64,000 nucleotides of DNA, taken from positions 170,736 through 234,735 of IMG/VR virus record IMGVR_UViG_3300046005_000547, one strand, 5' to 3'. Every line of letters begins with the position of its first letter. Within the stretch, counting starts at the first letter, position 1. The notes beneath the pieces were generated by a model that had not been told where the DNA came from, did not search any database, and saw only the letters and a program-made list of their open reading frames with translations. Of this stretch, positions 10,434 through 62,645 are shown piece by piece. The position numbers and the translations under genes were made by a program.

Positions 10434-10538
10434 TATAATACATCTTATTTGTTGAATACACAACGAAAACAATACATCCTGTATGATATATTGTTCTAAT
10501 CATTAACATTGTTTAAACGACAAATAAGATGTATTATA
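10434..10538. repeat. Dispersed ~105 bp inverted-repeat element, copy H1 (divergent)
   Basis: Perfect 19-bp arms TATAATACATCTTATTTGT (10434-10452) / ACAAATAAGATGTATTATA (10520-10538) with ATCCTGTA core. Confidence 0.85.
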
Positions 10539-10555
10539 ACTGATATTTTATCCAA

Positions 10556-10585
10556 AAGAAATCCCATCATTTTATTGATGGGATT
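10556..10585 (-). terminator. Intrinsic terminator
   Basis: AATCCCATCA/TGATGGGATT stem, A-tract on + strand. Confidence 0.8.
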
Positions 10586-10588
10586 ATC

Positions 10589-11035
10589 TTAAGGTTTTGA
10601 CGCAAATACATTAAAATGTTCAATATAATAACCGATTGCGCCAGCTATACCAACAATAAACCATTTCCATTGTTCAATCTTAGAAATACGTTCTTCTAAT
10701 TCTTCAATTTTATCTACAGTGTCTTCCAATTTATCTTTGTGAGCTTCAGCAAATTTTGAACCAAATTCAGCAACGCTTTTATTGATTTGTTTATCAGATT
10801 CATCCACTTTAGAAGATACGGCTTTAACATCTTGAACTAGAGATTTATGTTGTTCTTCAAATTTAATAATTTTTTCTTCATGTACAGCAACCATTTTATT
10901 CATGGTGATTGTATTTTCAGCAACCTTTTCAACAACTTTTTCTAATCTGTCGATTGTTCTTTGTTGGGATGCCAATTCAATATCGGCGACGTGGTCGGAT
11001 GCTCTTCTTTTAACAATCTGCTCTTCCATATGCAT
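10589..11035 (-). CDS. Coiled-coil protein with C-terminal TM helix (XhlA/holin-like architecture)
   Basis: Heptad-rich body; RISKIEQWKWFIVGIAGAIGYYI. Confidence 0.45.
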   Translation of the reverse strand: MHMEEQIVKRRASDHVADIELASQQRTIDRLEKVVEKVAENTITMNKMVAVHEEKIIKFEEQHKSLVQDVKAVSSKVDESDKQINKSVAEFGSKFAEAHKDKLEDTVDKIEELEERISKIEQWKWFIVGIAGAIGYYIEHFNVFASKP

Positions 11036-11420
11036 TTTCCGTTAAAGTTAAAAAATCAATCACTTGAATTTCTTCTTGTAATCGTTTATTTGATGAGACA
11101 ATATCTAAAAATTGTTCAGAAATTATATTCTCATCCATGTTGTTCTTGTATGATTCTTTGATTAAGAACATAGCAGCAGCTAAATTTTTAATTCTAGTGT
11201 CACCTCCAGGCAACATATTCATCATACGTTTTAAATTAAAAACTAATCTTTTTAGATAATTGACTGAATCTTTCTCTTCAGATGTTTTTAATGTATTGTA
11301 TTTTTTCAACACTTTACCATTCTCATCAATGATGCCTAATTTAAAAGCATCAGTTTGATTAAATGGTGTGGTCAATAATGACAATATACGTAAAGCAATA
11401 AGATTATCGATAATTTTCAT
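11010..11420 (-). CDS. Conserved T4-like phage hypothetical protein
   Basis: ALRILSLLTTPFNQTDAFKLGIIDENGKVLK motif seen in T4-like/jumbo phage late-region genes. Confidence 0.65.
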   Translation of the reverse strand: MKIIDNLIALRILSLLTTPFNQTDAFKLGIIDENGKVLKKYNTLKTSEEKDSVNYLKRLVFNLKRMMNMLPGGDTRIKNLAAAMFLIKESYKNNMDENIISEQFLDIVSSNKRLQEEIQVIDFLTLTENAYGRADC

Positions 11421-11763: not shown

Positions 11764-12633
11764 TTACACCACAGTCAACGTTGCAGCTGTTGTTAATTTA
11801 GGTGTAGCATTTGTTGCCGTCACATTACACGTATACTTTTTACCATTCAAACCAGTTGTATTTGAAATGGTCAATGTCGCGGTCGTTGTGCCGGTATAAA
11901 CACCCACGTTTGTTAAATCAACGCCATCGACTTTCCATTGGTAACTTAATGTACCACCACCAGCCGAAATTGTAGCAGTCGTCGCAAATGTTGTTCCAGC
12001 AGGAGCAGTAATTGTTCTATTTGTTGGAGCAGACGCTGAAATTACAAATGGATCTTTCATTCGCAATTCGCCAAATTTAGTAGTCACAGTATCAGCATTA
12101 GCTGCAGTTACAATACAACGATATTTCTTACCAATCAAACCAGTCGTAGAAGAAATAGATAACGTATTTGTCGTCGCTCCTAAATAAACACCAGTATTGG
12201 ATACGTTGGCGAATGTTTTATTCGAAGCAGAAACTTGCCATTGGTAACTTAATGCACCACCACCAACCGAAATAGTCGCTGTTGTTGAAACGGTTGCTGC
12301 AGTTCCTTCGAAGATTACACTTGATGCTGGATCTGTAGCTGAAATTACATAAGTTTGAGTCGCAGTTAAATTGGCATCCACTGCTCTGGTGACACCAATT
12401 GAATATCCAGAATTCGATGCTGGATTTAACAATTCAGCTTTATGTCGAGTTGTTCCAGCGGAATCTTTATACGTAAAGTATTTCCAATATCCTGAACATG
12501 TAATCCCTTTCAATTTAGTGTCTGGATCGTCAGCTTCCGCTTGAGATACAAAAATTACATTTCTTCTATCATCTTCCGATAGAAATGACGGTAAATTGGT
12601 TTCCGTATCTGTTCCAAATTTCCATGTACCCAT
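11764..12633 (-). CDS. Hoc-like virion decoration protein with two Ig-like domains
   Basis: Duplicated LSYQW...GVY.G.TT.TL.IS.TTGL.GKKY.C.VTA; TATAAATA late promoter upstream. Confidence 0.75.
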   Translation of the reverse strand: MGTWKFGTDTETNLPSFLSEDDRRNVIFVSQAEADDPDTKLKGITCSGYWKYFTYKDSAGTTRHKAELLNPASNSGYSIGVTRAVDANLTATQTYVISATDPASSVIFEGTAATVSTTATISVGGGALSYQWQVSASNKTFANVSNTGVYLGATTNTLSISSTTGLIGKKYRCIVTAANADTVTTKFGELRMKDPFVISASAPTNRTITAPAGTTFATTATISAGGGTLSYQWKVDGVDLTNVGVYTGTTTATLTISNTTGLNGKKYTCNVTATNATPKLTTAATLTVV

Positions 12634-12671: not shown

Positions 12672-12679
12672 TATTTATA
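12672..12679 (-). promoter_or_regulatory. T4-type late promoter
   Basis: Exact TATAAATA about 40 nt upstream of Ig-domain gene. Confidence 0.75.
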
Positions 12680-24301: not shown

Positions 24302-24988
24302 TTAATCATATTTGAATTCCTTTATATTATTTGCGTTCATCAACAATTCTTCTATTTCATGTATGTCTGGAAACTTATTGTCTACATTCAGAATAGGATA
24401 CATCGTCAATTCATTATTTTCATACATTGAATTACATTTAGTTCTTAATTGGAGTTCCTTACTTTGTAATTCATCTTTACTCAATTTCTGATAACGTCCA
24501 ATATCATTTAATTCTGGTAATCTACCCTCCAATAGACATTCAGCAACGTAAAGACATCTTGAAATATGAAATGATTTTCGATTCTTTTTATCTTTACTTG
24601 TATTCAATAATTTCAAATCAAATTTAGCTCTACCGACGAATCCTTTTATAATTTTGTACGTTCTACATGTTAATAATTTATCCGAATTCGTTATGTCTGT
24701 GAATAACACCAATTCAGCAAAAATGTTAGATTCACCAGATAATAAATTTTTGTAAAACGTAGATTCAGTTGTCAACATCCATTGAGTGTTATTTTCGATG
24801 TCATCAAATTGAAAACAATGGATGTTTGGATAAATTCTATCTGAATTGAAAATATCGTCGAGTATTAAAACAATATCCTTGTCCGATTGTTCTGTATTGG
24901 TTTTATGTAAATGGGATCCAAACGTATATCTAGAAATTGTATATTGTTTCAATATATCAAATTGTTCTTTTGTAATTTTTATGTTCAT
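24302..24988 (-). CDS. Pol-beta-family nucleotidyltransferase (RlaP/YcgL-like)
   Basis: FGSHLHKTNTEQSDKDIV (GS...SDxD). Confidence 0.7.
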   Translation of the reverse strand: MNIKITKEQFDILKQYTISRYTFGSHLHKTNTEQSDKDIVLILDDIFNSDRIYPNIHCFQFDDIENNTQWMLTTESTFYKNLLSGESNIFAELVLFTDITNSDKLLTCRTYKIIKGFVGRAKFDLKLLNTSKDKKNRKSFHISRCLYVAECLLEGRLPELNDIGRYQKLSKDELQSKELQLRTKCNSMYENNELTMYPILNVDNKFPDIHEIEELLMNANNIKEFKYD

Positions 24989-25485
24989 TTTTCTCCTTTC
25001 ATCATTTCTCTGTTTAATTCAACCACTTTCAATAGATTGTTATAATTTTCGGAGACGTAATTCTGTAATTCAAACCTATTTTCTGGTTTGATGTATTCAT
25101 CCGTTAAGATTGAATATAATTCTTTTAATGTACGTTTGTCGATCTTCTTGGAGGTTCCATCTGTAAATTTGATTTCATTATTATATCGAATTGCTTTATT
25201 ACATTGGATGATAATAGGTTCTAATGGTTTTGGTTGTTTCTTCAGATTAAGGTATTGTTGAACAAAAATATCAACATCTTCTTCGATCTTGGGGATTTCA
25301 TAGAATCCTTTTGAACGAGTATTTTCTTTCATCCATTGTTTGATTCCTTTGGGTGATGGGATGTTAAGATATTCATTTGTTTCTTGGAAGAAATACTCTG
25401 GGATACCGCCTGAATTCTGCGTATCTGATAAGAAGTAAATTGATGAGATTAGAGATAGGTATTGATTAAGTGATAATTCTTTCAT
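24985..25485 (-). CDS. Hypothetical protein, paralog family
   Basis: WMKEN...FYEIP; FTDGTSKKID; KPENR; YNNLL. Confidence 0.7.
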   Translation of the reverse strand: MKELSLNQYLSLISSIYFLSDTQNSGGIPEYFFQETNEYLNIPSPKGIKQWMKENTRSKGFYEIPKIEEDVDIFVQQYLNLKKQPKPLEPIIIQCNKAIRYNNEIKFTDGTSKKIDKRTLKELYSILTDEYIKPENRFELQNYVSENYNNLLKVVELNREMMKGEK

Positions 25486-25499: not shown

Positions 25500-26200
25500 A
25501 ATTGTTAGTATAATGTATTAGATATAATCGAAAAAGAGTCTTGAAGTAATATAGAAAATAATAAAAGAATATTAAAATGAAACAATAGAACTAACTCAAA
25601 CCGTCGACATAGTCTAGTATACTGGGTTTTTATCGATTTCGAAAGGAGTAATTAGACGTTGATTATTACACATTCGATAACCTTGGTCTCTTTCGATACG
25701 TGATTATAATTGTTTCGATGTTAATGTTTAATTTAACAGTCTATATTGTTGTTTTAAGATGTATTAAATGTATCCTGTAGAGTTGATTGACATAATAAGG
25801 AAAGATTCCATTAGAGCGGATTATTGGACAAATAATGGATGTTAATGATTCAACATAGAATTGATATATTGTAAATTTCAAACAATAAAAATCCCGACAG
25901 AATTGTTCATTCTTATCGGGATCTGAGACTCAGAGATTTTATGTTGAATTATTGTATAGAATATATTCGATAAAGACATTAATATACTCTATAAAGAATC
26001 TAATAGTAATATAAAAGAATATAGAAAAACAATAGATACACTAACTGAAACGTCGACATAGTCTAGTATACTGTATTTTTTATCATTTCGAAAGGAGTAA
26101 TTAGACTCTGTAATAATCATATTTATTCGATATCCAGTCAATCTTAAGACGTATTCGATGTTCCTTTCGATACATGATATAATCAGTTTCGATGAATAAC
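25500..26200. repeat. Tandem cassette array A: two GTCGACATAGTCTA-anchored units, period 449 bp
   Basis: Anchors at 25603 and 26052; minus-strand promoters TTTCGA-N17-TATACT at 25616-25644 and 26065-26093; hairpin element 25738-25841; terminator 25884-25923. Confidence 0.9.
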
Positions 26201-26488
26201 TTCGATAGATTCAATCTTAACATTATTTGATTTACGTCTATCCAACATATATTCATTGACATTTAATCTAACGAAATTCTCCGATCCTGATACAATCTTA
26301 AATTTACAGATAATATCATATCGACCATCAACCAAGTTTGAATTGTTAAAATTACCGTCAGTTACTCGTTTTAATATGAAGTCAATGTTTGGACTGAACC
26401 ATTTGAATCTCTTGGTAAAATCCAATCTATCTTTTGAATTTTCATATTCCTTCAAACACATCGCTCTGTACATTATCATATCCATCAT
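26183..26488 (-). CDS. Hypothetical protein sitting inside the repeat scaffold
   Basis: RBS+ATG supplied by left end of hairpin element H3; 3' end overlaps TTCGA boxes. Confidence 0.7.
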   Translation of the reverse strand: MMDMIMYRAMCLKEYENSKDRLDFTKRFKWFSPNIDFILKRVTDGNFNNSNLVDGRYDIICKFKIVSGSENFVRLNVNEYMLDRRKSNNVKIESIEVIHRN

Positions 26489-26491
26489 TTA

Positions 26492-26587
26492 ATCCATCTT
26501 ATTTGTCGTTTAAACAACGTTTCCATTATATCCTGTAGAGTTGATTGACAATATCAATAATCGTCAACTATGGACAAATAATGTCCA
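26492..26587. repeat. Inverted-repeat element copy H3
   Basis: Core TCCTGTAGAGTTGATTGACA at 26531-26550; arms TCCATCTTATTTGTC / GACAAATAATGTCCA. Confidence 0.85.
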
Positions 26588-26619
26588 TAATACAATAGGA
26601 ATAATAAACCTTTACGCAT

Positions 26620-26656
26620 AAAAAAATCCTAATCAACTTTTCAGCCGATTAGGATC
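26620..26656 (-). terminator. Intrinsic terminator
   Basis: ATCCTAATC/GATTAGGAT stem with A7 tract on + strand. Confidence 0.75.
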
Positions 26657-26666
26657 GTATTAACAA

Positions 26667-27431: not shown

Positions 27432-28637
27432 CTATAACTCGTACAAAGAAATATTTTTATCTTCGTTACCCGTAAATTTTAACATATTTCTAGGATTATA
27501 TTTTGTTTCGAATTCTATTCTTTCTTTTTCGTCAAACCATTCATTATAATGGGAAACGCACAATTTTCCTCCAATTGATTTTTCTAAATTAAACCCCATT
27601 ATTTCTCTGGAGTTTGGTTCGTCTTTGTAATAAGTGTGGGTGTCAAAATTCAATCCTTTATCATATAATGCACTAGAATATTCTTTTTTTGTTTTTGCGA
27701 ATTCTTTCGCAAATTTACCTTTCGTATTCATAGCGATTACGAAAGGTTTAAAATTTATTTCACCTTCCCAAGAATAATATAATTTATCGTATAATTCTGC
27801 GATTTTATTGGTATTTACGTACAATTGGTAGAATAAAGGATTATGTTTTATCGTTTTTCTTAATTGACATAAACAAGTTTCTAAATTATAAATATCGATA
27901 TGGATTATAGAATTATCGTTACAATAATGATATATTTCTTTAACCTTTTCTTCGAAAAATAATAATCTATTTATGTCCGTATTTTTTGTTTTTTTAATTA
28001 TTTGCCATTCTTCTTTATTTAAAACCCAACAAAGAGCATTCCATTGCGACCAACTATTTTGGTTTTCCAACTGTAATTCCGGTATATCTATATCATAATC
28101 GAAAAACTCATACATCATTTGTTTCGTTAACCAAACCCCCATTCTACCGTATCCATGTAAACTTTGTAATTCTTCGGTTAAATTATTGAAATTAGTTATA
28201 GGATTTCCAGTTTTGGTTAATTTTTCAAAATGTTCGATTATGTCAATGTTTTCGTATCGTTCTTTTAAATCTTTAAATAATCCGACAAAATTCCTATAAC
28301 ATTTCAAAGTATCAGTCGCGTAGAAACATCTTTTCGAATTATTTTCAACGAATTCGTTTATTTCTTCTACAGAAGTTTCTAAAAAATTAGGAAACTTCTG
28401 TAGAATTATCATTGGCCAATGACTCCGATAAGATTGACCAAAAATTAAGCAATAAAAAAGTTTTTGTTTATCTGTTAAATTCATTTCGGAAGCGATAACT
28501 TTACCATGGTGCCAATGATCTATATCTCCTTCTAACATTAAAACGTTTGTATACCTTCTAAACAATTCCATTCTATTTTCAGGTAATCTCCAATCTTTAT
28601 AATTCGATTCTTCTAATTCATAATCAAATAAACTCAT
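27432..28637 (-). CDS. Second aGPT-Pplase / amino-acid:DNA transferase
   Basis: DWRLPENRMELF; EGDIDH; LHGYGRMGVWL; NLETCLCQLRK; immediately downstream of a TET/JBP gene. Confidence 0.7.
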   Translation of the reverse strand: MSLFDYELEESNYKDWRLPENRMELFRRYTNVLMLEGDIDHWHHGKVIASEMNLTDKQKLFYCLIFGQSYRSHWPMIILQKFPNFLETSVEEINEFVENNSKRCFYATDTLKCYRNFVGLFKDLKERYENIDIIEHFEKLTKTGNPITNFNNLTEELQSLHGYGRMGVWLTKQMMYEFFDYDIDIPELQLENQNSWSQWNALCWVLNKEEWQIIKKTKNTDINRLLFFEEKVKEIYHYCNDNSIIHIDIYNLETCLCQLRKTIKHNPLFYQLYVNTNKIAELYDKLYYSWEGEINFKPFVIAMNTKGKFAKEFAKTKKEYSSALYDKGLNFDTHTYYKDEPNSREIMGFNLEKSIGGKLCVSHYNEWFDEKERIEFETKYNPRNMLKFTGNEDKNISLYEL

Positions 28638-28767
28638 TATTTTTTTCCTTTATCTTATTTGGTTTAATCTTCATTTAGAAATCTATTTAATAATATATTT
28701 GCGTTCGCTGTTATATCTCCAGTAAAACGAAAAATGGAGAAACCCGTTAAGGTCTCTCCAATCTTAT

Positions 28768-30138
28768 TTAAAAGAATTCATCCAATGATGTAGATTCAAA
28801 TTCATCTTTAAGGTCTTGATGATATTCATCAATCCATTGTTGCCCTTTCTCATGTTCTAATAAGAAATCGTACCATTCTTTCGATGTCCACATTTTTTGG
28901 AAAACGCCGTTCCAAAGTGGGCGCCATAATGGATGCGTCTCATCTTTACGTCTGGTGTCAACAAACAAACGTCTATAATCTTCATATTCCTTTGAACCCA
29001 GACCCAACATGTCTTCTCTGAAATAAGCAATAACAGAAATACGTTCACCACCTTCTTCGGTTTGAATGAATTCAGTGTTTCCATGTAAAATTTCATGATT
29101 ATTGATTAAACATAAATCTCTTGGTCTAATGTTAACTGCAATTCTATATGCAGGAAACACTAGATAACAACCTTCATAATTCTCATTTTTAGATAACACC
29201 AATAGATTTGAGAACCCTGATGTCAAATCACCGGCATCAAAATGATAATGCGTACGAAACGATTTATTTACAGTCACTGTTGTAAATACGGTTTCGGGAA
29301 TCAAAAATGCTGGATCCATTTTGTCGGCAGCTGCTCTCTGGTTACCCCATCTCCAAGGTAATAATTCCTTGAATCCTCCATTCAAACGTTTGAAAAATGG
29401 AAATGATAATTTGAATTTATCAAAATGATGGTCGGTGTATCCGGTTGCTCTACCATAAGGGATTCGTGGGTATCTTGAATACCATCCAGCAATACCAGAA
29501 TATGCTGGAGCAGCATAAACTGTATTAGACACCCAATTTTTCATTACAAATAATGCTCGTTCTTTGGCATCTTCTTGGTCCATGGATTCTAATTCTGAAA
29601 CCAATTCATCAAATTTAAAATTGTCTGGAGTTTTATTAGTCAACCATACAGAAGTTCTTAAACCGTTGTTAGATGAATTATCTTGTTGTTTGAGTTGTTC
29701 TAATGGATCCGAACCGTCTAATGTACTTGTTCTATCAATAAAGTATTCTAAAATATCATGTTGACGTTTAGTGAATCGTTCGCGTCGTTCATTATCTGTT
29801 ATTTCTTCTAACATACCAGCAGCAAGTCCGCGATTGTTAGATAATACAGCAGCATCTCTTAATCCGCCGTACGCTCCATCGTGTTCTTCAATAGTGAAAA
29901 ATCCTTTACGATATTTAAATGCGATACGCCGTTCATCAGAACCTTTATCGCATGAATTACATTCAGATACACAAGTTGCTTTGGTTGATAAATCGCATAA
30001 TGGTTCCATGTATACATCAACGTCTTCGTCGATATCTCCCCCAGGTCCAATTAAAATATCATAATGAGATCTATCTGCACCATGACCCAATAGGTGGTCT
30101 ACGTTATGTTTTTCTTTTGCTACAATAATTCTTGCCAT
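28768..30138 (-). CDS. TET/JBP-family 2OG-Fe(II) dioxygenase, paralog A
   Basis: PETVFTTVTVNKSFRTHYHFDAGD (HxD); ILHGNT; ERISVIAYFRE; YPRIPYGRAT. Confidence 0.9.
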   Translation of the reverse strand: MARIIVAKEKHNVDHLLGHGADRSHYDILIGPGGDIDEDVDVYMEPLCDLSTKATCVSECNSCDKGSDERRIAFKYRKGFFTIEEHDGAYGGLRDAAVLSNNRGLAAGMLEEITDNERRERFTKRQHDILEYFIDRTSTLDGSDPLEQLKQQDNSSNNGLRTSVWLTNKTPDNFKFDELVSELESMDQEDAKERALFVMKNWVSNTVYAAPAYSGIAGWYSRYPRIPYGRATGYTDHHFDKFKLSFPFFKRLNGGFKELLPWRWGNQRAAADKMDPAFLIPETVFTTVTVNKSFRTHYHFDAGDLTSGFSNLLVLSKNENYEGCYLVFPAYRIAVNIRPRDLCLINNHEILHGNTEFIQTEEGGERISVIAYFREDMLGLGSKEYEDYRRLFVDTRRKDETHPLWRPLWNGVFQKMWTSKEWYDFLLEHEKGQQWIDEYHQDLKDEFESTSLDEFF

Positions 30139-30318
30139 ATGTTTGCCCTTTTGTTTAAAATTACATTATACTCTATAATGTTTAAAATAGAAATCTTCTT
30201 AATACATTACATATAATACACAAATCTAATGGAGTTCAGAATAATATCTGAACTCCATGTTTATCACCAACTAATTGTCCATGTATAATTTACAGTGGAA
30301 TGTCATTTTCGATATTCA

Positions 30319-31047: not shown

Positions 31048-31059
31048 TTGGTTCTCCTG

Positions 31060-31596: not shown

Positions 31597-31626
31597 TTCT
31601 TATACTCTTAAAATTAACATATTTCT

Positions 31627-41655: not shown

Positions 41656-42138
41656 CTATTCAATCCAAAATGACAATTTCATAATAGAATTAAATCTATA
41701 CATTTTAGAATCTTCAACTTTTATTTTCGCGCCGCAACCAATGTATATTTCATCTCCGTTTATAAATGAATTGTAAATTACATCAACCAAATTGTAATCT
41801 ATTTTCTCTCCATTTTTACAGACATCAAAATATACATTTATATGATTTGAAATTGATTCATTAGAAATCTTATATAAATCCTTACTAGAAAATGTATGAG
41901 GATTTATATACAATAAAAATTCAACAAATTTATTTTTAGAATCAACACAAAATCCAATACATTTAGATTCAATGTTACCATCAACATTTTTAAATTCTAA
42001 TGGTTTCAATTCAGAATCATCCATTTTTACAAACATAGAACGTTCGTCAATTATATAATTTTGATTTTCGATTGTATCCAATAAATTATACAAATTATCG
42101 TTACGTTCTGAATATGATTTTGTATATTTTACCAACAT
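41656..42138 (-). CDS. Hypothetical protein
   Basis: Single gene between repeated terminators. Confidence 0.65.
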   Translation of the reverse strand: MLVKYTKSYSERNDNLYNLLDTIENQNYIIDERSMFVKMDDSELKPLEFKNVDGNIESKCIGFCVDSKNKFVEFLLYINPHTFSSKDLYKISNESISNHINVYFDVCKNGEKIDYNLVDVIYNSFINGDEIYIGCGAKIKVEDSKMYRFNSIMKLSFWIE

Positions 42139-42202
42139 CAGAATTCCTATAGTAATTAAAAAAAGAAATCCTAGTTGATATTTCTACCAACTAGGTTCAA
42201 CA

Positions 42203-42814
42203 TTACAACAATTTATCTGTAATCAACATACGTTTCATCTTATGTCTATCAGTTTTACCCCAAATATCTTTATTTTTCTTTTTGAACATTTCCCATTCGT
42301 GTAAATTATCAATCTTCTCCAATTCTTTGGTTAAAAAATCAAAATAATATACGTTCAATCCTTTATTAAACGCCTTACCGATACAACGTTCCCAAAATCG
42401 TTTACCATCAAATGTTTGAATAGAATCCGTTAAAATTGTATGGTGTCGTTTCAATAAAATTTCAAAAAACATTTTAGCCGCAACACCTTCGATATAATTG
42501 TAAACTGGATTTATCCAAACTCCAGATTGCCAAACGAAATCTCCAAGTTCTATACAACTACCCAATTTATATGTCATATCGTATGTAATCAATTCTTCTT
42601 CAATATCTAATACAAAGAAATTATCTCTCCATTCGTACATATTTGAATTTGCCGATAAATTAAACGCCAATTTCTTTCTTTGTTCTTTATACAATTCCAG
42701 ATAATTTTCTCTATTTTTATCTGCATCTATTAATTCTTCTGGATCCCAACTTTTCATAATCTTTGGCATTTCCATCAACATTTTATTGTATTCTCCAAAT
42801 CTCAACATCTTCAT
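42203..42814 (-). CDS. GNAT-fold protein with capsid-targeting-like N-terminus
   Basis: MLRFGEYNKMLME/M; GVAAKMFF...ILTDSIQTFDGKRFW. Confidence 0.5.
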   Translation of the reverse strand: MKMLRFGEYNKMLMEMPKIMKSWDPEELIDADKNRENYLELYKEQRKKLAFNLSANSNMYEWRDNFFVLDIEEELITYDMTYKLGSCIELGDFVWQSGVWINPVYNYIEGVAAKMFFEILLKRHHTILTDSIQTFDGKRFWERCIGKAFNKGLNVYYFDFLTKELEKIDNLHEWEMFKKKNKDIWGKTDRHKMKRMLITDKLL

Positions 42815-42975
42815 TCCCGATAAATTAAATTTGTATTCATTATAGATTATATCTATTGTTTTCCAAAGAAAAACCTAGCTGATATTTCCACCAACTAGGT
42901 TCTCTCATCACTTTTTAAACAAATTCAAAATTGTATCTATCATGACGTATCCAATCAATACTAATGACATCCAAA

Positions 42976-51913: not shown

Positions 51914-53650
51914 TTAACAACTTTGCGAGCTTGGATTCCAACCTTGATTGTCAGACGAAATCCAATCGTCATCTGATGCAGCCCAGCTTGGTTTATACCC
52001 AGTGCCATAAAATGTCCCATTCATACCATATTCGAGATCCCAATCAAATTCTAAACCAAATTCATTGGCAATTGCTTCAGCTTTATTGATATTGGTATAA
52101 GCACCATCAAGTAATTCTGCGATCTGTTGGTTTGCTTCTTTGATTTGTTCTTCTGTAAATTTGCTCATGTTAAATTCCTAATTGAGATTCAATGATTACT
52201 TCTAATTCTGTTCTTGTCATCTTTGTGATTACATAATTTCTATCATGTAACCAATCAGCCAATGTCTTCAGTCTGTTCTTTTCCAATGTTCCTTTGTAGA
52301 ATATAGTTGATGAGATTCCTTGTTCATCAATAAGTTTTGTGGAACCGTAAGATAATTCTAATTTAAATTTTTTCATTGTACACCAAATACTGTTTGTAAT
52401 CGTTCAACAATTCCAACATCAATAATCATTGCCTGCGCAAATAATACAATCATTATAACCAAAGATTTGATTCCGTATGAGGTAACAATCATCAGATTCC
52501 TTCACTATATCGTCTTTAGATAGACCAGTATGTTTCATCAGATAACTTCTGAATCTAGCGAAGTTATCGCTGAATGGAATTACAGTTCTGTTATCAATTT
52601 TAATGTTCAGTTTCATTTGACTTCCTGATACATTATTGTAAATGTTGTAGAATTTAATCCATCATCTAAATGATGAGAGAATCCAATAACTTTGTATCCA
52701 TTTTCAATCATGTATTCCACTTGTCGTTCGCAAATTTCATAACTGGAATACGTTTCGATTTTAATGTTCATATCAATACCATTCTTTATCAAATTGTCTT
52801 AATTCGCCGAATTTACCACCTTCAATTAAATTGATACTTTGATAAAATAACCAAGTTCCACCAAATATCAACACCATTTTAAAGATACAATCTAATAATG
52901 GAAATCCCCCAATATACCCTAAGATGAACGATAATGCCACCAAGATAATCCATCCAACTGTTTTACTTTTCATTTGTTAATATTCCTTTCAATTCCGATA
53001 GATGTTTAACAATTCCATCAATAATTTCATTAATTGATTCCGAATTGTTCGTTAAAATTTCAACATTTTGTTTTGTTCTATCGAAGAATTGGGAATAATA
53101 ACGATTATGGTCTAAAATTCTTCTATCAAATTGTTGAATTTCGCAAATAAGATTTTCAATATCGCGTTGTATATTATTCATATTTGAATTGTCCTGTTCT
53201 CATAAAATGTTCAGTTAATTTTAAAGCTAATTGATGTTCTTTAGAAATCCTTTTAAATGAAGCTAAGATTCTCCAATACGGTCTTGACTTATCTTCGGTC
53301 TCAATCAGATTGATTTTGGCATATTCTGTTAACACGATTTTGTTCTTATCAGCAAATTCCAATATCTGTTCATGAGATGGTTTGAAATGTAATTTCATCA
53401 TTAAATGGGATTCGCTGATAACTACATTTTCATCTTTGATTTGTCTGTCGTCATTTATGTCGTCAATAGCAACTTGAATGTAATCAATACGTCGTTGTAT
53501 ATAGTCATCATCGATTTCTTGAGATTCATCTAACGAATTTTGTAGAATGTATTTGGTTGTACTCAATATACCCATTAACAATTCTTCATTGGTCATCTTA
53601 GTTGATTGTCTGATTGTCATTAGATACACTCCAGTAAGATATCCAAACAA
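51914..53650 (-). other. Block of small hypothetical phage ORFs (51914-52168, 52170-52376, 52419-52616, 52773-52973, 52963-53181, 53174-53650)
   Basis: Co-oriented packed ORFs; one is hydrophobic (52773-52973). Confidence 0.6.
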
Positions 53651-54117
53651 ATAGTTGATTGTGTCTTATTCATATTTCGATTCTGTCTTAGATATTGAAT
53701 AATCTGAATTGTTGATTTCTTATAATTATCAGATGGACAATCCATTACATTCGATAATCTATCAACTAATTTAATGGTAAGTCCGTAAGATGACATCGAA
53801 ACTAATTTCAACATCAGGTAATTAGTCTTACCAATAATTTTAATTTGTTCATCGTCGGAAGTCATCTCATCAACTAGGTTGGCAATCAGATCCCCAAATC
53901 TCGTTCTGATTTCATCGTTAGATACTTCACAGTCTTCTTGTACGTCATGTAATAGACAAACAGAAACCAATGATTCGATGTTCTTAGATGTTTTATATTT
54001 GCGTAACAATTCTGCTACATGAATAGGATGAGTGATATATTCTTTACCAGTCTTTCTTCTGAATTGACCTTGATGTTGTTCTGTGGCAAATTTTAACGCA
54101 TCGTCGATAATGTTCAT
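53620..54117 (-). CDS. HD-domain small alarmone hydrolase (SpoT/Mesh1-like)
   Basis: ALKFATEQHQGQFR...YITHPIHVA; LLHDVQED; IKLVDRLSN. Confidence 0.88.
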   Translation of the reverse strand: MNIIDDALKFATEQHQGQFRRKTGKEYITHPIHVAELLRKYKTSKNIESLVSVCLLHDVQEDCEVSNDEIRTRFGDLIANLVDEMTSDDEQIKIIGKTNYLMLKLVSMSSYGLTIKLVDRLSNVMDCPSDNYKKSTIQIIQYLRQNRNMNKTQSTICLDILLECI

Positions 54118-54123
54118 TTAACA

Positions 54124-54223
54124 CCATTATTTGTTGTTTTAAGATGGATTAGATTTATCATGTAGAGTTGATTGACATATTATGGAAACGTTCCACTAGA
54201 GTGGATTATTGGACAAATAATGG
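54124..54223. repeat. Inverted-repeat element copy H4
   Basis: Arms CCATTATTTGT (54124-54134) / ACAAATAATGG (54213-54223); core TCATGTAGAGTTGATTGACA. Confidence 0.9.
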
Positions 54224-54247
54224 AGGAATTATATGCCAATCAACGAA

Positions 54248-57787: not shown

Positions 57788-57899
57788 TGTTATTACCTCA
57801 TAAAATTGTAAATGAAATTCAGGATTAAACCAACTTGAAATCTATTATAATGATTTTAATATACATCGAAAGGAATTTTCCAGTTGAAATGTATATAAA

Positions 57900-59560
57900 A
57901 TAAAGTCGAGGAAGACACTAAAAGAAAACCTAAAAACAATAGATACACTAACTCAAACCGTCGACATAGTCTAGTATATCCGAGTTTTATCGATTTCGAA
58001 AGGAGTATTCTTATCATGTAATAATCATATTCGATGCTTACGGTTATCCTTCGATGTCCTTAATGCTCTTTCGATATGTTGAATTTACAGTTTCGATGTA
58101 ATCATTAAATCCTTTCCAATTATTTGTTGTTTAAGATGGATTCATTATATCCTGTAGAGTTGATTGACATTTAACATAAAGATTCCATTAGAGTGGATTA
58201 TTGGACAAACAATAGATACATTAGGGTTGTTTTGGAATGACAATTCTGTATATTGAATCCAATAAAAATCCCAACAGAATGTTTAGTTCATATTGGGATT
58301 CTGGATGACAGAGATTTTATGTTGAATAATTGATATAATAAAGTCTATAAAATGTCTTGTGATGATATAATAAAGTCTATAAAGAGTCTTGAAGTAATAT
58401 AAAAGAATACTAAAACGAGTAAAGAACATTAATAGAACTAACTCAAACCGTCGACATAGTCTAGTATACTGGGTTTTTTATTATTTCGAAAGGAGTATAA
58501 GACGATGATTATTACACATTCGATACATTATTTCATCTTAAGATTCCGTTTCGATGTTTAATATGTTCTTTCGATATGTTGAATTTACAACTTCGATGTT
58601 CTTGTTTATTATAGACATCCATATTGTTGTTTTATGATGGATTCAATATATCCTGTAGAGTTGATTGACATATAATGGAAACGATCCATTAGAGCCCATT
58701 AACGAGCAAATAATGGATATATTAAGAATGATTCGGAACAAACATATTGTAAATTTCAAACAATAAAAATCCCACTCAGAATAAATCTGGCGGGATCTGA
58801 ATGACGGAGATTTTATGTTGAATATAGATGATTATATTATGTCGTTGTAGTAATATAATAATGTCTATAAAGAATCTAATAGTAATATAGAAGAACACTT
58901 AATGAAAGTAAAGGCAATAACTGAAACGTCGACATAGTCTACTATAATTGAATTTCGTCGAAAAGTCAAGAGAAATCTTTAGCTTGTAATAATCATATTC
59001 GATGCCTTAGATTATCGAACAATACCTTTAATGCTCTTTCGATACATGGTATCTATTGTTTCGATGTTAACATAAAATCCTGTCCAGTTATTTGCTGATT
59101 TAAGATGGAGAGATTTTATGACATAGAGTTGATTGACATAATATACAAAGATTCCATTAAGATGGAATATTGGACAAATAATGGATGTTATATGATTGGA
59201 TTGAAATCATATTATGTAAATTTTAAACAATAAAAATCCCAACAGAATGATTAGTTCACGTTGGGATGAATTATAAAGTCGATAAAGAATCTTGAAGTAA
59301 TATAGAAAACAATAAAAGAATATAGAAATGTTATTAAAGGTAATAACTGAAACGTCGACATAGTCTACTATACCCGAGTTTCTGACATTTCGAAAGGAGT
59401 TTAAGACGTTGATTATATCAAGCTCGACGTTTCGTGTATTCTTAAGACTCTTTCGATACATTGAATTTACATCTTCGATGTTAACATTTAATCCTACATG
59501 GAAATTTGCTGATTTAAGGACGATTCATTATATCCTGTAGAGTTTCCTGTCATACATAAT
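57900..59560. repeat. Tandem cassette array B: four units, no credible genes
   Basis: GTCGACATAGTCTA anchors at 57960, 58450, 58928, 59354 (periods 490, 478, 426); hairpin cores at 58150, 58651, 59119, 59533; terminators at about 58261-58300, 58762-58797, 59229-59267. Confidence 0.95.
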
Positions 59561-59629
59561 AAAAACATGTTAAATTGTATTATTGAACAAACAAATAAAT
59601 AAATAAATAAAATAACAAAAGGATAATCC

Positions 59630-62431
59630 ATGAAAACCTTCACTGACATACGCAAACAAATCAACGAGAACAGTCTTTATACTTCTCAACAAGAGAAAGA
59701 CGACTTCCTGAAAGATAAAAAGAAAATTGTAACTGCATTCTTATACTCTTTCATCGGTAATCTATCTCTTTACAATAAAGACTCTGCCAAAGCAAAACAT
59801 TATTTCTTATCGGATAAGAAATTACAGATTGTCAACATCAATGACGATAACAATGATGCGTCTTTAATTCTGAAAATCATGCATGATGAACATGGATTCA
59901 AGAATACAAACACTGCCAATGAGATGACTAAATTATTGGCAAAATTGAAAGTCTCGGATGTATCATCATTCGATGATGCAATTATCAGAGCATGGTTGTC
60001 GGATCTATCTCCTGCGTTCCATTCCGCTATCCCAACGGATTTGAAAAAGACTGTCGATGATTACATGAATAGTGTCACCAGTTTCGATAGATTGAGTTAC
60101 AAATTGTATAAACATAAGACTGCTTATGGTGACGGAGAGTATCTTGATTTGGCAAAGAAAGTTGGTCGAATCGAAAGACATACACATAAACCGAAAGTCG
60201 TAGTGACTCCAACTGCATCTGCCGTTCCACCTACATTAGCAAATCCTCAGATATTTGTTCCTACCGTTAATACATCGACTGCTGTTGTTACAACTCCACC
60301 GGATGTTATAGATGAACCTATTCAAATTGTTGAGAAAGAACCAGAAGTTAAACAATTCAATCAAGAATTGTATGACAAATTTAAAGTTAAAAATTTATTG
60401 AGTGATGATGAATGGGATGAATTGATTGAGGATAAAGAAGTTTTCGTTAAAATAATGATTGAATCTCCGAAACGATTATATACAACCCAATACCATAAAA
60501 TTAGAAAAGTTATGTTCAAAGAATTATCGGAAGAACAACTCATGGAAATGAAGAAAGTCTCCTGGAATTTAGATGTATTTAAATATGATATCAAAGATTC
60601 AATCATGATTCTGAAAGATAGAAATATGGATTTCGTTAAGATTTTTGGACCTTTACGAGTTGCGCAATATATGTGCGACAAAGATATTTCCGCGGGTAAA
60701 GAAATCATTGATTTTTATACTGAACAAAAGATCTTAATTTCAACTGATAATGGTAATCGTATTGTAAAGGATTTTCCAGAAATCTTAGTGGATGCAGTTA
60801 AATTGACAATCAAAGACATGGGAGTCGATTATGGTAGCTCGATGGCTGTTCATTTAAATCAACAACAAATTGATGAAATTTATGATGTTAATGATAGATT
60901 ACTTGTATTACGAAATGTTGTATTGACTGGTAGATTGATAAAGGATCCAGTTGATTTATTGAAGAAATTCAATTACAATGAAGTTTTAATCAAAGCTGGT
61001 TTAGAAAATACAAGTGTGCCTCATTTCACGCCGTATCTAAATTCAATGAATAAATTGTTCATGGAAGATATGGATAAATGGTATCCATGGGAACGAAAAT
61101 ATAGTTACATTAAACAATTATTCACCAAACCAAATGTAATTGATTATTTCAATGATAAATTTAAAAGAGCATTTACGGATGATGGTGTATTTGAATACTT
61201 CGACGACAAAGAACGATTAGATGGTATTTCATCATCATTGTTTGATTTGTTAGTATCCAATTATAAAACCAAACCGGAACTTGTTGATTCTATCTTCAAT
61301 GATTTTGGTGATAAGATTAAAACAAGAGTCAAAAAGAATTTCAACTCGACATTCAGAGTGATGCATGATTTAAAAGATAGCGCATTACCAATCAAAGAAG
61401 AACTAGATGCCAAATCTATTCAAGCTATCTTGGAATTCAATGACATCGACCTTAGTGTAATTTCTGGCACCAAAATGAAATTCTCTAAGAACAAATCGTT
61501 AAGTCAAACAATCAATGATTTTGTTAAAGATGAATCTGTTACCACTATTGAACCATTGAAAATTGTTGATTTGAAAACATCTGATGCAGATAACAAGAAG
61601 TTATCTCAGAAGATTGTTGATGAAACGCATTCTGGTGGTAAACATGGGGACATCTATCCATTAGTCTTACGTCAATTTGAAGTTCATCTACCAGATGATA
61701 AATTCCAAGAGTTCAAAAAATTGATGATTCAGAATAATTCACATAAAGAGATTGTTCCTGCTTTCCATGGCACTGGTTCTATTGCAGCTAATATGATTCT
61801 TAGATATGGATTTAAAGTGTTACCAGAACAAAGTAATTCTGCTATTGGTATACAAGGTAGAATGTTAGGTGATGGTATTTACTTTGGTACCAATATCGAC
61901 AAAGTATTACAATATGTTGGTAATAAAGGAATGACCAGAAGACTTGGTACAACTGGATATGTATTTGAAATGGAGAACGAACTTGGGGTAAAAGGTAATG
62001 ATTACAAAGAAGCTGGGTTGGGTAATGATAAAATTGCTTCGCCAGAATGGGTTGTATTTGATGCCAACAGACAATTAAAAATTATTAAGGCGTATGAAGT
62101 GAAATTGGTAGATAAATCAGAATTAGATAAATCATTAAATGAATCAGTCAAACCAAGAATGATGTCATTCAAAGAATATGTTGATATCAAGAAGAACAAT
62201 TATACATCATACAATTTCTATGACAGAAATGTAATTACGCCTGATGGCAAAGTAATCAAATCGACTGATGTAACAGACACTACATTTAAGAAAGGTATTA
62301 GAGTTGAAATCAGAGGAAGAATTACATCAGTGATTATTCCAACGAAACAATTAGAATTCAATGATGTATTGAGTTGTTATGATTTACAGGATAAACAATT
62401 AGACAAGTATCTTCGTCTATTGAATAAATAA
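59630..62431 (+). CDS. Large PARP-like (H-Y-E) ADP-ribosyltransferase, probable injected head protein (functional analogue of T4 Alt)
   Basis: N-term MKTFTDIRKQINE; catalytic motifs AFHGT, GRMLGDGIYF, SPEWVVF; (TAAA)n late-promoter-like tract and AAGGA RBS upstream. Confidence 0.8.
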   Translation: MKTFTDIRKQINENSLYTSQQEKDDFLKDKKKIVTAFLYSFIGNLSLYNKDSAKAKHYFLSDKKLQIVNINDDNNDASLILKIMHDEHGFKNTNTANEMTKLLAKLKVSDVSSFDDAIIRAWLSDLSPAFHSAIPTDLKKTVDDYMNSVTSFDRLSYKLYKHKTAYGDGEYLDLAKKVGRIERHTHKPKVVVTPTASAVPPTLANPQIFVPTVNTSTAVVTTPPDVIDEPIQIVEKEPEVKQFNQELYDKFKVKNLLSDDEWDELIEDKEVFVKIMIESPKRLYTTQYHKIRKVMFKELSEEQLMEMKKVSWNLDVFKYDIKDSIMILKDRNMDFVKIFGPLRVAQYMCDKDISAGKEIIDFYTEQKILISTDNGNRIVKDFPEILVDAVKLTIKDMGVDYGSSMAVHLNQQQIDEIYDVNDRLLVLRNVVLTGRLIKDPVDLLKKFNYNEVLIKAGLENTSVPHFTPYLNSMNKLFMEDMDKWYPWERKYSYIKQLFTKPNVIDYFNDKFKRAFTDDGVFEYFDDKERLDGISSSLFDLLVSNYKTKPELVDSIFNDFGDKIKTRVKKNFNSTFRVMHDLKDSALPIKEELDAKSIQAILEFNDIDLSVISGTKMKFSKNKSLSQTINDFVKDESVTTIEPLKIVDLKTSDADNKKLSQKIVDETHSGGKHGDIYPLVLRQFEVHLPDDKFQEFKKLMIQNNSHKEIVPAFHGTGSIAANMILRYGFKVLPEQSNSAIGIQGRMLGDGIYFGTNIDKVLQYVGNKGMTRRLGTTGYVFEMENELGVKGNDYKEAGLGNDKIASPEWVVFDANRQLKIIKAYEVKLVDKSELDKSLNESVKPRMMSFKEYVDIKKNNYTSYNFYDRNVITPDGKVIKSTDVTDTTFKKGIRVEIRGRITSVIIPTKQLEFNDVLSCYDLQDKQLDKYLRLLNK

Positions 62432-62470
62432 TGAAAGAATCCCAGACATGTTAAAGTGTCTGGGATTTTT
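62432..62470. terminator. Intrinsic terminator
   Basis: AATCCCAGACA/TGTCTGGGATT followed by TTT. Confidence 0.85.
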
Positions 62471-62471
62471 A

Positions 62472-62645
62472 ATGGAAATTTGTTGTTTTAAGATGGAATA
62501 ATAACATCCTGTAGAGTTTATTGACATATAATGGAAACGAACAACTAGAGTCCATTAACGAACAAATAATGGATGTTTTAATATTGATTTGTGGTCAGAA
62601 TATTGTATCCAATAAAAATCCCAGTCAACTTCGGTCTTCTGGGAT
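62472..62645. repeat. Partial cassette: inverted-repeat element H9 plus the array-type terminator
   Basis: Core TCCTGTAGAGTTTATTGACA at 62507-62526; AATAAAAATCCCAG..CTTCGG..CTGGGAT at about 62611-62645. Confidence 0.85.

What the first reader, a model, noticed from the sequence alone, without database searches (positions are those of the whole stretch)
10434..62576. Nine dispersed copies of a ~105-bp nested inverted-repeat element with a conserved asymmetric core
Seen: copies at about 10434, 25738, 26492, 54124, 58114, 58616, 59082, 59497 (partial) and 62472. Outer arms are (T)CCATTATTTGT / ACAAATAATGG(A); H1 has a different perfect 19-bp pair, so pairing is kept while sequence changes. Inner arms are AAGATGGA / (T)TCCA(T/C)TA, and the core TCCTGTAGAGTTGATTGACA is strongly conserved. 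On the minus strand the element usually follows a terminator or gene end, and in five copies it ends in RBS+ATG (GGATTAAATG at 26488 and 59487, GGTGTTAAATG at 54117). The core sits just upstream of a TATAAT in several copies. Inference: a structured ncRNA/riboregulator, an activator-dependent promoter class analogous to the T4 MotA box, or a cruciform recombination site. I do not recognise it as a described element.
Basis: partly seen in the sequence, partly recalled or inferred. Interest (0 to 1): 0.8.

Follow-up and report, generated by a model that had tools for sequence, protein, structure and literature searches.

The report
Repeated promoter cassette in T4-like phage
The nine repeats are real, but they look like copies of a promoter-containing regulatory cassette of an uncultured lake T4-like phage rather than a folded RNA, resembling the known "PeSL" promoter-terminator cassettes except that an unusual invariant 12-24 bp box replaces the normal -35 element.

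Summary
All nine copies exist, all in minus-strand orientation. The source phage genome (234.7 kb, lake water) holds at least 25. The conserved part is a box, ATGTCAATCAACTCTACAGGAT. CAATCAACTCTA within it is invariant even in a relative with about 71-77% identity. A -10-like hexamer (TAnnnT in about 65% of copies) follows directly. The box usually lies about 80-100 nt after an intrinsic terminator. It lies 24-39 nt before a start codon, or about 190 nt before a second promoter (CTTTCGA-N16/17-TATAAT class). The nested inverted repeat is not a conserved structure. Only copy 10434 and its ortholog fold strongly. Cognate arms around the box are only slightly more complementary than non-cognate ones (p about 0.01). 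Most copies sit in tandem ~460-bp units (element, second promoter, terminator) that carry no ORF. Some units carry an ORFan instead, and the arrays are conserved in the relative. The best reading is a PeSL/PmSL-like promoter-terminator cassette with a novel, activator-type box. I found no MotA/AsiA, no Rfam match and no transcript data. New variant of a known kind, moderate interest.

The parts
58097..58234 (-). Full element copy (c58114). Box is at 58172-58149, -10 TATAAT at 58149-58144, conserved leader, then GGATTTAATG opening a 6-codon ORF.
   Evidence: nhmmer 3.5e-32; coordinates; ORF
58598..58736 (-). Full element copy (c58616). Box is at 58673-58650, -10 TATATT.
59065..59203 (-). Full element copy (c59082). 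Box variant ends in ...CTCTATGTCAT; -10 TAAAAT.
59479..59595 (-). First, partial copy of the array (c59497), lacking the upstream half. Box is ATGACAGGAAACTCTACAGGAT, -10 TATAAT. It abuts the divergent Alt-like gene. The divergence between the two near-identical genomes starts at 59565, inside this copy.
54114..54242 (-). Solitary full copy between two genes with no terminator upstream. The -10 is degenerate (TAAATC). It ends in GGTGTTAAATG, the start of the HD-domain gene. An 11-bp outer pair lies next to the SD, and a 12/13-nt inverted copy of the box lies upstream.
26483..26601 (-). Solitary copy after terminator 26625-26656. It has a perfect box and TATAAT, and is the only promoter candidate for the 101-aa gene 26183-26488. 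Its upstream half is replaced by other sequence.
25719..25852 (-). Full copy heading an ORF-less unit (-10 TACATT). It is followed by a second promoter at about 25645-25617, then gene 24985-25485.
62462..62591 (-). Copy lying between two convergent terminators with no gene downstream. Box has one change and the -10 has decayed (TGTTAT). Its ortholog in the relative is inverted.
10429..10544 (-). Divergent copy (H1). The box has decayed to ...CAATATATCATACAGGAT and has been absorbed into a roughly 50-bp near-perfect palindrome. A CTTTCG-class promoter (10425-10397) and the 72-aa gene follow.
58237..58300 (-). Intrinsic terminator preceding c58114: hairpin plus GGGATTTTTATTGG. It is representative of the terminators at about 58773, 59240, 25895, 26630, 62622 and 10565.
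   Evidence: Terminator stems covary across units; tails located; for 26625-26656
57960..58002 (-). Second promoter of the unit (P2): CTCCTTTCGAAAT-N-TATACT followed by invariant AGACTATGTCGAC. The same arrangement occurs at 58492-58450, 59396-59354, 26094-26052 and 25645-25603. The variant at 58969-58928 has TTGACT-N17-TATAGT.
58018..58100 (-). Linker between the element and P2, with (C/T)ATCGAA motifs spaced about 20-22 bp apart. Their reverse complement is the CTTTCGAT -35 box of the second promoter class.
53620..54117 (-). Gene served by c54124: HD-domain phosphohydrolase, 165 aa.
   Evidence: Pfam HD_4 5.6e-15; phrog_990
26183..26488 (-). Gene served by c26492: 101-aa phage ORFan (phrog_22386).

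Best explanation
The element is the promoter half of a repeated transcription-control cassette of a T4-like phage.

Anatomy, read on the minus strand:
1. An intrinsic terminator ends the upstream unit.
2. An AT-rich, phased CCA(T/A)TA(T/A)T region follows, at about -45 to -85.
3. Next comes an invariant asymmetric box, at about -34 to -13. Its core, CAATCAACTCTA, sits at -29 to -18.
4. A -10 hexamer follows.
5. A conserved roughly 30-nt leader ends either in SD+ATG of a small gene or, about 190 nt later, in a second promoter of the CTTTCGA-N16/17-TATAAT class.

Inferred mechanism:
- Host RNA polymerase uses the -10.
- The box takes the place of a -35 element and is read by a phage-specified factor (Mot-box-like logic) or by a modified polymerase. 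This would define one temporal class.
- The second promoter would define another class.

Because the cassettes are long and nearly identical, they also act as portable homology for cassette gain, loss and inversion, as described for PeSLs.

The 'nested inverted repeat' is mostly a by-product of repeated ATCCAT/ATGGAT and TTATTTG/CAAATAA motifs and of AT-rich -10-like flanks on both sides of the box. In a few copies it has been sharpened into true palindromes.

Shown: the anatomy, orientation, conservation, terminators and absence of a conserved RNA fold. Inferred: promoter activity, the factor, the timing and the recombination role.
For: - The copies are real and far beyond chance.
- All window copies share the orientation of the genes. 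Elsewhere the downstream ORFs are co-oriented with the element.
- A hexamer of the form TAnnnT follows the box at a fixed offset in about 22 of 34 distinct copies, against roughly 4-12% expected from base composition (my estimate). In the relative it is kept but shifted by 2 bp.
- Of the 34 distinct copies, 21 lie 79-104 nt after a hairpin-plus-T-run terminator. The terminator stems covary.
- Gene 26183-26488 has no other promoter candidate between its upstream terminator and its ATG.
- The distance from the -10 to the ATG of real genes is 24-36 nt.
- Units have the order element, P2, (ORF), terminator. ORFs are present in some units (L014 213 aa, L024 116 aa) and absent in others.
- The 4-unit array is conserved at the same locus in the relative.
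- Canonical TTGAC-N17-TAnnnT and TGCTT Mot-box promoters are virtually absent from minus-strand intergenic DNA, so this phage uses other boxes.
- The architecture matches the published PeSL/PmSL description.
- Mosaic boundary 59565 lies inside a copy, a 2-gene indel lies beside c62472, and the ortholog of c62472 is inverted between terminators.
Against: - There is no transcript evidence. No RNA run was listed, and only DNA contigs were available.
- No -35-like hexamer lies at 16-18 bp from the -10, and the conservation runs through what would be the spacer. That is atypical for sigma-70 and for MotA promoters.
- Four copies in front of real genes keep a perfect box but have a poor -10 (TAAATC, TATCCT, TAACAA, TGTTTA). 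The box may therefore have a function that does not need the -10.
- No candidate factor was found. No T4 MotA/AsiA homolog turned up in about 150 kb of held sequence, and no sigma or RNAP family appeared among the 105 window ORFs scanned against Pfam.
- Cognate arms flanking the box are slightly more complementary than non-cognate ones (p about 0.013). A small upstream hairpin shows covariation. Some structural constraint therefore cannot be excluded.
Confidence: 0.58

Rival explanations
1. The element acts at the RNA level as a cis-element. The box would be a single-stranded recognition sequence in 5' leaders or intercistronic RNA, sometimes presented in the loop of a variable stem. It would serve a phage RNA-binding protein, nuclease or antisense RNA that controls translation or processing of the downstream gene.
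For: - The box is perfectly kept in copies that lie inside operons and have poor -10 hexamers.
- In L034, L092_12957, L092_14381 and c10434, arms of different sequence flank the box or its remnant.
- Cognate arms beat non-cognate arms with p about 0.013.
- The box is less complementary to its own flanks than random genome segments are.
- c54124 has an 11-bp outer pair next to its SD, reminiscent of the T4 e/soc-type hairpins (my recollection of that literature).
Against: - No consensus structure was found and the proposed arms do not covary.
- Most copies fold no better than shuffles.
- Most copies lie behind efficient-looking terminators, so little RNA would cross them.
- In most array copies nothing translatable follows.
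- There is no Rfam match.
Confidence: 0.15
2. The element acts at the DNA level but is not a promoter. The box would be a site for a phage DNA-binding protein or enzyme: an operator or insulator, an origin-associated site together with the ATCGAA iteron-like linker and promoters (as in T4 origins), a site-specific nick, or a recombination site.
For: - A 20-24 bp asymmetric invariant site is longer than typical promoter boxes.
- The upstream half of the element is even better conserved between species than the -10.
- ATCGAA motifs are phased at about 20-22 bp between the element and P2.
- Arrays start at divergent gene junctions.
- Mosaic boundaries and an inversion lie at copies.
Against: - The strict co-orientation with transcription, the fixed -10-like hexamer and the spacing to start codons are not needed for such sites.
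- Only a few copies are palindromic.
- No recombinase or nickase is linked to the copies.
- Raw reads that could show nicks or ends were not available.
Confidence: 0.17
3. The element is a miniature inverted-repeat transposable element (MITE- or Correia-like) that spread through the phage genome and happens to carry a promoter.
For: - It is about 105 bp long.
- Some copies have terminal TTATTTGT/ACAAATAA arms.
- It has many dispersed intergenic copies.
Against: - The flanks of most copies are themselves homologous (terminator upstream, linker and P2 downstream), so the repeated unit is about 460 bp, not 105 bp.
- Solitary copies are truncated to different extents and are not bounded by the arms (L038, L051).
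- I saw no target-site duplication at c54124.
- The outer arms are unpaired in most copies.
- No filled/empty polymorphism of the 105-bp element alone was seen between the three genomes.
Confidence: 0.03

Closest known systems
PeSL / PmSL cassettes (promoter-early or promoter-middle stem-loops) of T4-like phages RB49/phi1, T4/PST and KVP40/nt-1 (PMC2839356, PMC4122927)
   Same: - Both are composite intergenic cassettes ordered as terminator stem-loop, AT-rich region, promoter, SD and ATG.
- Both have many near-identical copies.
- Both are concentrated among small ORFans in plastic regions of a T4-like genome.
- Both show degraded copies.
- Both are associated with indels, replacements and mosaic boundaries.
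   Different: - The promoter here has no sigma-70 -35 hexamer and no TGCTT Mot box. It has an invariant 12-24 bp box running up to the -10.
- The conserved part is much longer (about 105 bp, within a 460-bp unit).
- Each unit carries a second promoter of another class.
- Many units form tandem ORF-less arrays that are conserved between species.
- Promoter and terminator activity and mini-circles are untested here.
T4 MotA/AsiA-dependent middle promoters (review PMC2988021 appeared in the search list but I did not read it; details are from my own knowledge)
   Same: - Both have a good -10 with no -35.
- Both have a class-specific box upstream of the -10 at a tolerance of about 2 bp.
- Both occur in tandem with another promoter class in front of the same genes.
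   Different: - The box sequence is unrelated to TGCTT, is longer and lies closer to the -10 (about -29 to -18, or -34 to -13).
- No MotA or AsiA homolog was detected in the sequence held.
- It is not known which of the two classes here, if either, is 'middle'.
T4 early promoters (conservation extends beyond -35/-10; from my own knowledge)
   Same: - Both are very strongly conserved over tens of bp, including upstream A/T tracts.
- Both lie in front of small non-essential genes.
- An Alt-like ADP-ribosyltransferase gene is present in the phage.
   Different: There is no GTTTAC/TTGACA-type -35. Recognition by unmodified host polymerase is therefore doubtful.
Promoters of single-subunit phage RNA polymerases (T7/T3/SP6; from my own knowledge)
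   Same: - Both are about 20-23 bp, asymmetric and nearly invariant.
- CTCTACAGGA loosely resembles CACTATAGGGA.
   Different: - No such polymerase was found in the window or expected in a T4-like phage.
- The resemblance is recalled from memory, not tested.
- The 3' half of the box is replaced by TGTCAT in several copies and in the relative.
Correia elements / MITEs of bacteria (from my own knowledge)
   Same: - Both are about 100-150 bp intergenic repeats with inverted ends.
- Both can carry promoters.
   Different: - Here the arms are not conserved.
- There are no target duplications.
- The flanks are homologous, so the repeated unit is larger than the element.

Membership tests
PeSL/PmSL cassette of T4-like phages | Resides in a T4-like phage genome, preferentially among variable small ORFs | tested here: met
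   UvsX is about 52% identical to those of T4-like phages. gp41-like helicase, RNR and an Alt-like gene are present. The neighbours of the element are ORFans.
PeSL/PmSL cassette of T4-like phages | Stem-loop terminator just upstream of the promoter | tested here: met
   A hairpin plus T-run lies 79-104 nt upstream in 21 of 34 copies, including 7 of the 9 window copies. The stems covary. It is absent where the copy follows a gene directly or opens an array.
PeSL/PmSL cassette of T4-like phages | Sigma-70-like -35 and -10 boxes (PeSL), or TGCTT Mot box plus -10 (PmSL) | tested here: not met
   A -10-like hexamer is present in about 65% of copies. No -35 hexamer lies at 16-18 bp and there is no TGCTT; an unrelated invariant box stands there instead.
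PeSL/PmSL cassette of T4-like phages | SD and start codon of the downstream gene at the 3' end | tested here: inconclusive
   Met for 26488 and 54117, and for L049, L051 and L038. In three window copies the ATG opens only 6 codons. In most array copies a linker and a second promoter follow.
PeSL/PmSL cassette of T4-like phages | Associated with indels, replacements or recombination between close relatives | tested here: inconclusive
   Divergence between the near-identical genomes begins at 59565 inside a copy. A 2-gene indel lies beside c62472, and its ortholog is inverted in the relative. The number of events is small. The contig lay-out was uninformative.
PeSL/PmSL cassette of T4-like phages | Demonstrated promoter and terminator activity; mini-circle formation | not testable with these tools
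   Needs reporter fusions and inverse PCR, as in PMC2839356.
MotA/AsiA-dependent middle promoter | Phage encodes MotA and AsiA | tested here: inconclusive
   phmmer with T4 MotA and AsiA found no hit in 1017 ORFs from about 150 kb of this lineage. No such Pfam family was found in window ORFs. More than half of the genome was not held.
MotA/AsiA-dependent middle promoter | Mot box (a/t)(a/t)TGCTT(t/c)A centred near -30, 11-13 bp from TAnnnT | tested here: not met
   No intergenic TGCTT-N13-16-TAnnnT occurs on either strand. The box here is CAATCAACTCTA, 5-7 bp from the hexamer.
Structured cis-regulatory RNA / ncRNA | Conserved secondary structure supported by covariation | tested here: not met
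RNAalifold finds 0 pairs. Only a 6-bp upstream hairpin does. There is no Rfam family.
MITE / Correia-like element | Conserved terminal inverted repeats, target-site duplication, and unrelated flanks with filled/empty sites | tested here: not met
   The outermost pairs are unpaired in 16-21 of 27 copies. The flanks are homologous. I saw no duplication at c54124.
T4 e/soc/49-type hairpin that hides the RBS in read-through RNA, with a promoter inside the hairpin | Stem whose 3' arm covers the SD or start codon and whose 5' arm lies upstream of an internal promoter | tested here: inconclusive
   c54124 has an 11-bp outer pair ending 2-3 nt before the GGTG SD, but the MFE fold does not use it. The pair is absent in most copies.

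The most novel reading that the evidence does not exclude
The invariant box may be the recognition site of an unknown phage-encoded transcription factor or sigma-appropriation system (or a non-host polymerase). That system would define a new temporal promoter class in a T4-like lineage that appears to lack MotA/AsiA and canonical sigma-70 promoters. Under this reading the ORF-less tandem element-P2-terminator units, conserved between species, would be functional in their own right. They might act as polymerase or factor sinks, as short non-coding RNA factories, or as promoter-primed replication origins.
Probability: 0.25. Interest if true: 0.65.

Novelty: new variant of a known kind. Interest (0 to 1): 0.4.

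Why it matters
T4 transcription control (early sigma-70, MotA/AsiA middle, gp55 late) is the textbook model. How distant, uncultured T4-like phages schedule their genes is largely unknown.

This abundant lake phage shows two non-canonical promoter classes and a T4-type late motif. One of the two classes is packaged in long, near-identical cassettes of the kind thought to drive modular gene shuffling.

If the box is confirmed as a factor-dependent promoter, it offers:
- a handle for finding the factor;
- a way to predict early genes in metagenomic phages;
- a way to study cassette-mediated gene exchange.

If not confirmed, the result is still a useful annotation: these repeats are regulatory cassettes, not a new RNA family.

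Tried and rejected
- Rfam gathering scan and tRNA scan of the whole window found nothing.
- megablast and blastn of the array and the element against 50,697 phage records gave no match.
- An 18-mer box scan of metagenome contigs gave 30 hits. All were chance: only the box matched and the GC content was wrong.
- In the 16-mer scan of viral contigs, only five contigs of one sample series are true relatives.
- I considered a plus-strand promoter using the perfect TTGACA in the core. I rejected it because 17 bp downstream stands ATTAGA/ACTAGA (no A at position 2, no T at position 6), terminators and genes are minus-oriented, and there is nothing for it to drive.
- I looked for a structured sRNA between P2 and the terminator. 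Only the terminator hairpin is conserved.
- I asked whether the 6-codon 'MLTSK' ORFs are leader peptides. The ATG is missing in most units.
- I asked whether an anti-box sequence pairs with the core. This is seen only in c54124.
- The RNA run search listed none. Laying lake DNA contigs showed only repeat-fragmented assemblies with 5-12x summed depth over the array, and gave no usable joints.
- phmmer with T4 MotA/AsiA and Pfam scans of 105 window ORFs found no transcription factor.

Full report
**Context**

The window is the last 64 kb of IMGVR_UViG_3300046005_000547, a 234.7-kb contig. It is held at high depth by lake-water DNA runs. It encodes UvsX (about 52% identical to those of Sinorhizobium phiM12-type and Aeromonas Aeh1-type T4-like phages), a gp41-like helicase, RNR, two Tet/JBP oxygenases with an ADDT transferase, and a 933-aa Alt-like ADP-ribosyltransferase. 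GC content is 31% and almost all genes are on the minus strand. No cultured phage matches at the DNA level.

**Observation**

The 20-nt core occurs six times with at most 1 mismatch, against 0 expected. A profile of the nine reported copies recovers exactly those nine places in the window (E 1e-14 to 1e-32). It also finds at least 16 more copies in other held pieces of the same genome. So the family is real and has 25 or more members.

All window copies point the same way. Read on the minus strand, the consensus has five parts in order:
- ATCCATTATTTGTCCAATAATCCA-yCyTArTGGAAyc;
- about 12 AT-rich bases;
- ATGTCAATCAACTCTACAGGA;
- TATAAT;
- gAATCCATCTTAAAaCAACAAAT.

**Is it a nested inverted repeat?**

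Only weakly.
- RNAalifold on 29 distinct copies predicts no pair at all.
The outermost three pairs are unpaired in most copies.
- In about eight copies the right outer arm is ...AAATTTCCATG, a direct copy of the TCCAT motif rather than an inverted one.
- Single-copy folds have z-scores between about +1 and -2.9 and disagree with one another. Only c10434 (z = -7.5) and its ortholog in the relative (L034, z = -4.7) are strongly structured.
- Two residual signals remain. A 6-bp hairpin TCCAyy..rrTGGA in the upstream half covaries (0/500 shuffles). Each copy's own left and right flanks of the box are slightly more complementary than mismatched flanks (-8.9 against -7.9 kcal/mol, p about 0.013). 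That difference is driven by a handful of copies with perfect 12-21 bp arms of different sequence.

I read the apparent symmetry as mostly due to two things. The ATCCAT/ATGGAT and TTATTTG/CAAATAA motifs recur in both orientations, and -10-like AT-rich hexamers flank the box on both strands. Occasional copies have been sharpened into palindromes. Templated quasi-palindrome correction, a process first described in T4, would do that; this last point is my inference from general knowledge.

**What the anatomy says**

- On the minus strand the box is followed at a fixed offset by TAnnnT in about 22 of 34 distinct copies. The commonest forms are TATAAT, TATATT, TAAAAT and TACATT.
- In the relative (IMGVR_UViG_3300046008_000242, 71% amino-acid identity in the neighbouring gene) the same four-unit array exists at the same locus. 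There the invariant part shrinks to CAATCAACTCTA, and a TATAAT/TAAAAT/TGTAAT hexamer sits 2 bp further away.
- Of the 34 copies, 21 lie 79-104 nt behind a hairpin-plus-T-run terminator. These terminator stems show compensatory changes, which fixes the direction of transcription as minus.
- Real genes start 24-36 nt after the hexamer: the 101-aa phrog_22386 gene at 26488, the 165-aa HD hydrolase at 54117, and genes in L049, L051 and L038.
- Gene 26183-26488 has no other promoter candidate between terminator 26625-26656 and its ATG.

**The larger unit**

Most copies belong to tandem units of about 460 bp. Each unit has this order:
1. the element;
2. a linker with (C/T)ATCGAA motifs every 20-22 bp;
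3. a second promoter, P2 (CTCCTTTCGAAAT-N-TATACT or, at the same position, TTGACT-N17-TATAGT), followed by invariant AGACTATGTCGAC;
4. about 150 nt;
5. a terminator.

In some units an ORF sits between P2 and the terminator (213 aa in L014, 116 aa in L024), or directly after the element (26183-26488). Most units have no ORF. The last unit of each array runs into ordinary genes.

P2 belongs to a class, CTTTCG(A)-N16/17-TATAAT-AGA, that precedes about 15 ordinary genes of the window by 50-90 nt. By contrast, TTGAC-N17-TAnnnT and TGCTT Mot-box promoters are essentially absent from minus-strand intergenic DNA. One T4-type late motif, TATAAATA, precedes gene 11764-12633.

So the phage appears to have two non-canonical pre-late promoter classes, often in tandem. 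The element is one of them.

**Comparison with the literature**

Comeau, Arbiol and Krisch describe PeSLs in T4-like phages as follows (PMC2839356, PMC4122927):
- they are composite cassettes, with a stem-loop terminator just upstream of an AT-rich region and a promoter, ending in the SD and ATG of the next gene;
- they have many conserved copies in hyperplastic regions;
- degraded copies occur;
- a Mot-box variant (PmSL) exists;
- they act as recombination linkers and form mini-circles.

The present element fits this architecture. Consistent with a linker role:
- The two near-identical genomes are identical for more than 9.9 kb up to 59564, apart from one substitution at about 58885. They then diverge from 59565, inside copy c59497.
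- A two-gene indel lies beside c62472.
- The ortholog of c62472 in the relative is inverted between two convergent terminators that share a 19-bp inverted tail.

These are few events, so the support is only suggestive.

**What does not fit**

- There is no -35.
- The conservation runs through the spacer.
- Four copies with a perfect box have poor -10 hexamers.
- No factor was found. T4 MotA and AsiA have no detectable homolog in about 150 kb of this lineage. Pfam scans of 105 window ORFs show no sigma, polymerase, MotA or AsiA.
- No RNA data exist for this phage.

The promoter assignment is therefore an inference, at confidence about 0.6. An RNA-level or DNA-site function of the box remains possible. 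A MITE is unlikely: the flanks are homologous, the arms are not conserved and there is no target duplication.

**Verdict**

It is best explained as a PeSL/PmSL-like promoter-terminator cassette with a novel invariant box. The new aspects are the box itself, the companion CTTTCG promoter class, and the conserved ORF-less tandem arrays. I rate it a new variant of a known kind, of moderate interest.

Noticed in passing
window minus strand, -35 boxes at 63015, 57872, 55490, 42868, 41612, 40690, 37085, 31655, 27425, 23411, 17016, 10425: A second promoter class, (A)AGTT-CTTTCG(A)-N16/17-TATAAT-AGA, lies 50-90 nt upstream of about 15 ordinary genes. Canonical TTGACA-N17-TATAAT and T4 Mot-box promoters are essentially absent. 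At the P2 position, TTTCGA and TTGACT alternate in the same register.
   Followed up: partly
window 57800-59600 and 25500-26660; L024 1-1900, L041 3930-5535, L008 (minus orientation) 8000-9400; L092 8380-9900: Tandem arrays of 3-4 units of about 460 bp, ordered element, ATCGAA linker, P2, about 150 nt, terminator. Most carry no ORF. The array is conserved at the same locus in a relative of about 71-77% identity. Only the terminator is a conserved RNA structure. The function of the 'empty' units is unexplained.
   Followed up: partly
window 58018-58100, 58505-58590, 58990-59065, 25660-25720, 26110-26195: (C/T)ATCGAA(A/G) motifs are spaced about 20-22 bp apart between the element and P2. Their reverse complement equals the CTTTCGAT -35 box of the second promoter class. 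They could be decoy or iteron-like sites for whatever reads that box.
   Followed up: no
window 41570-41665, 42150-42215, 42835-42920: Three copies of another composite terminator-promoter. The hairpin CCTAGCTGATATTTC.ACCAACTAGG (read on the plus strand) runs straight into a CTTTGG-N17-TATAAT promoter on the minus strand. This is PeSL-like with the second promoter class.
   Followed up: no
window 62462-62640 versus L092 12860-13060: The copy downstream of the Alt-like gene lies between two convergent terminators. It is inverted in the relative, which carries a 19-bp perfect inverted repeat (GGGATTTTTATTGGATAAG) on either side. This suggests inversion by recombination between terminator tails.
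   Followed up: partly
window 59565 and 62653-63220: Compared with the near-identical genome IMGVR_UViG_3300046004_000591, there is a single substitution (about 58885) over more than 9.9 kb up to 59564, then 5-10% divergence through the Alt-like gene. A two-gene segment (62653-63220) is present only in the window.
   Followed up: yes
window 27432-33995: DNA hypermodification cluster: two paralogous Tet/JBP-type oxygenases (28768-30138, 32634-33995; DNA repeats D7/D8 are about 70% identical) and an ADDT amino-acid:DNA transferase (27432-28637). A second ADDT-like hit lies elsewhere in the window.
   Followed up: no
window 59630-62431 (+): A 933-aa protein with a weak PARP-type ADP-ribosyltransferase domain, related to large proteins of Aeromonas and Stenotrophomonas T4-like phages (Alt-like). 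It is the only long plus-strand gene here, is divergent from the array, and is preceded by an AAATAAATAAATA run.
   Followed up: partly
window 12672-12679 (-): A single T4-type late-promoter motif, TATAAATA, lies 46 nt upstream of gene 11764-12633.
   Followed up: no
window, ORFs not individually mapped (Pfam scans): The window also encodes Pfam hits to Acb1 (anti-CBASS), Sir2, a caspase-like Peptidase_C14, a SegE-type GIY-YIG endonuclease, Cpn10, ThyX, RNase H, GatB/YqeY and SLOG/DprA-like domains. I did not map which ORF carries which domain.
   Followed up: no
window 54226-54245: Just upstream of c54124, the end of the preceding gene contains GTTGATTGGCATAT. This is a 12/13-nt inverted copy of the box that could pair with it (duplex -16.5 kcal/mol, p about 0.001 against random segments). 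It is seen in this copy only.
   Followed up: partly
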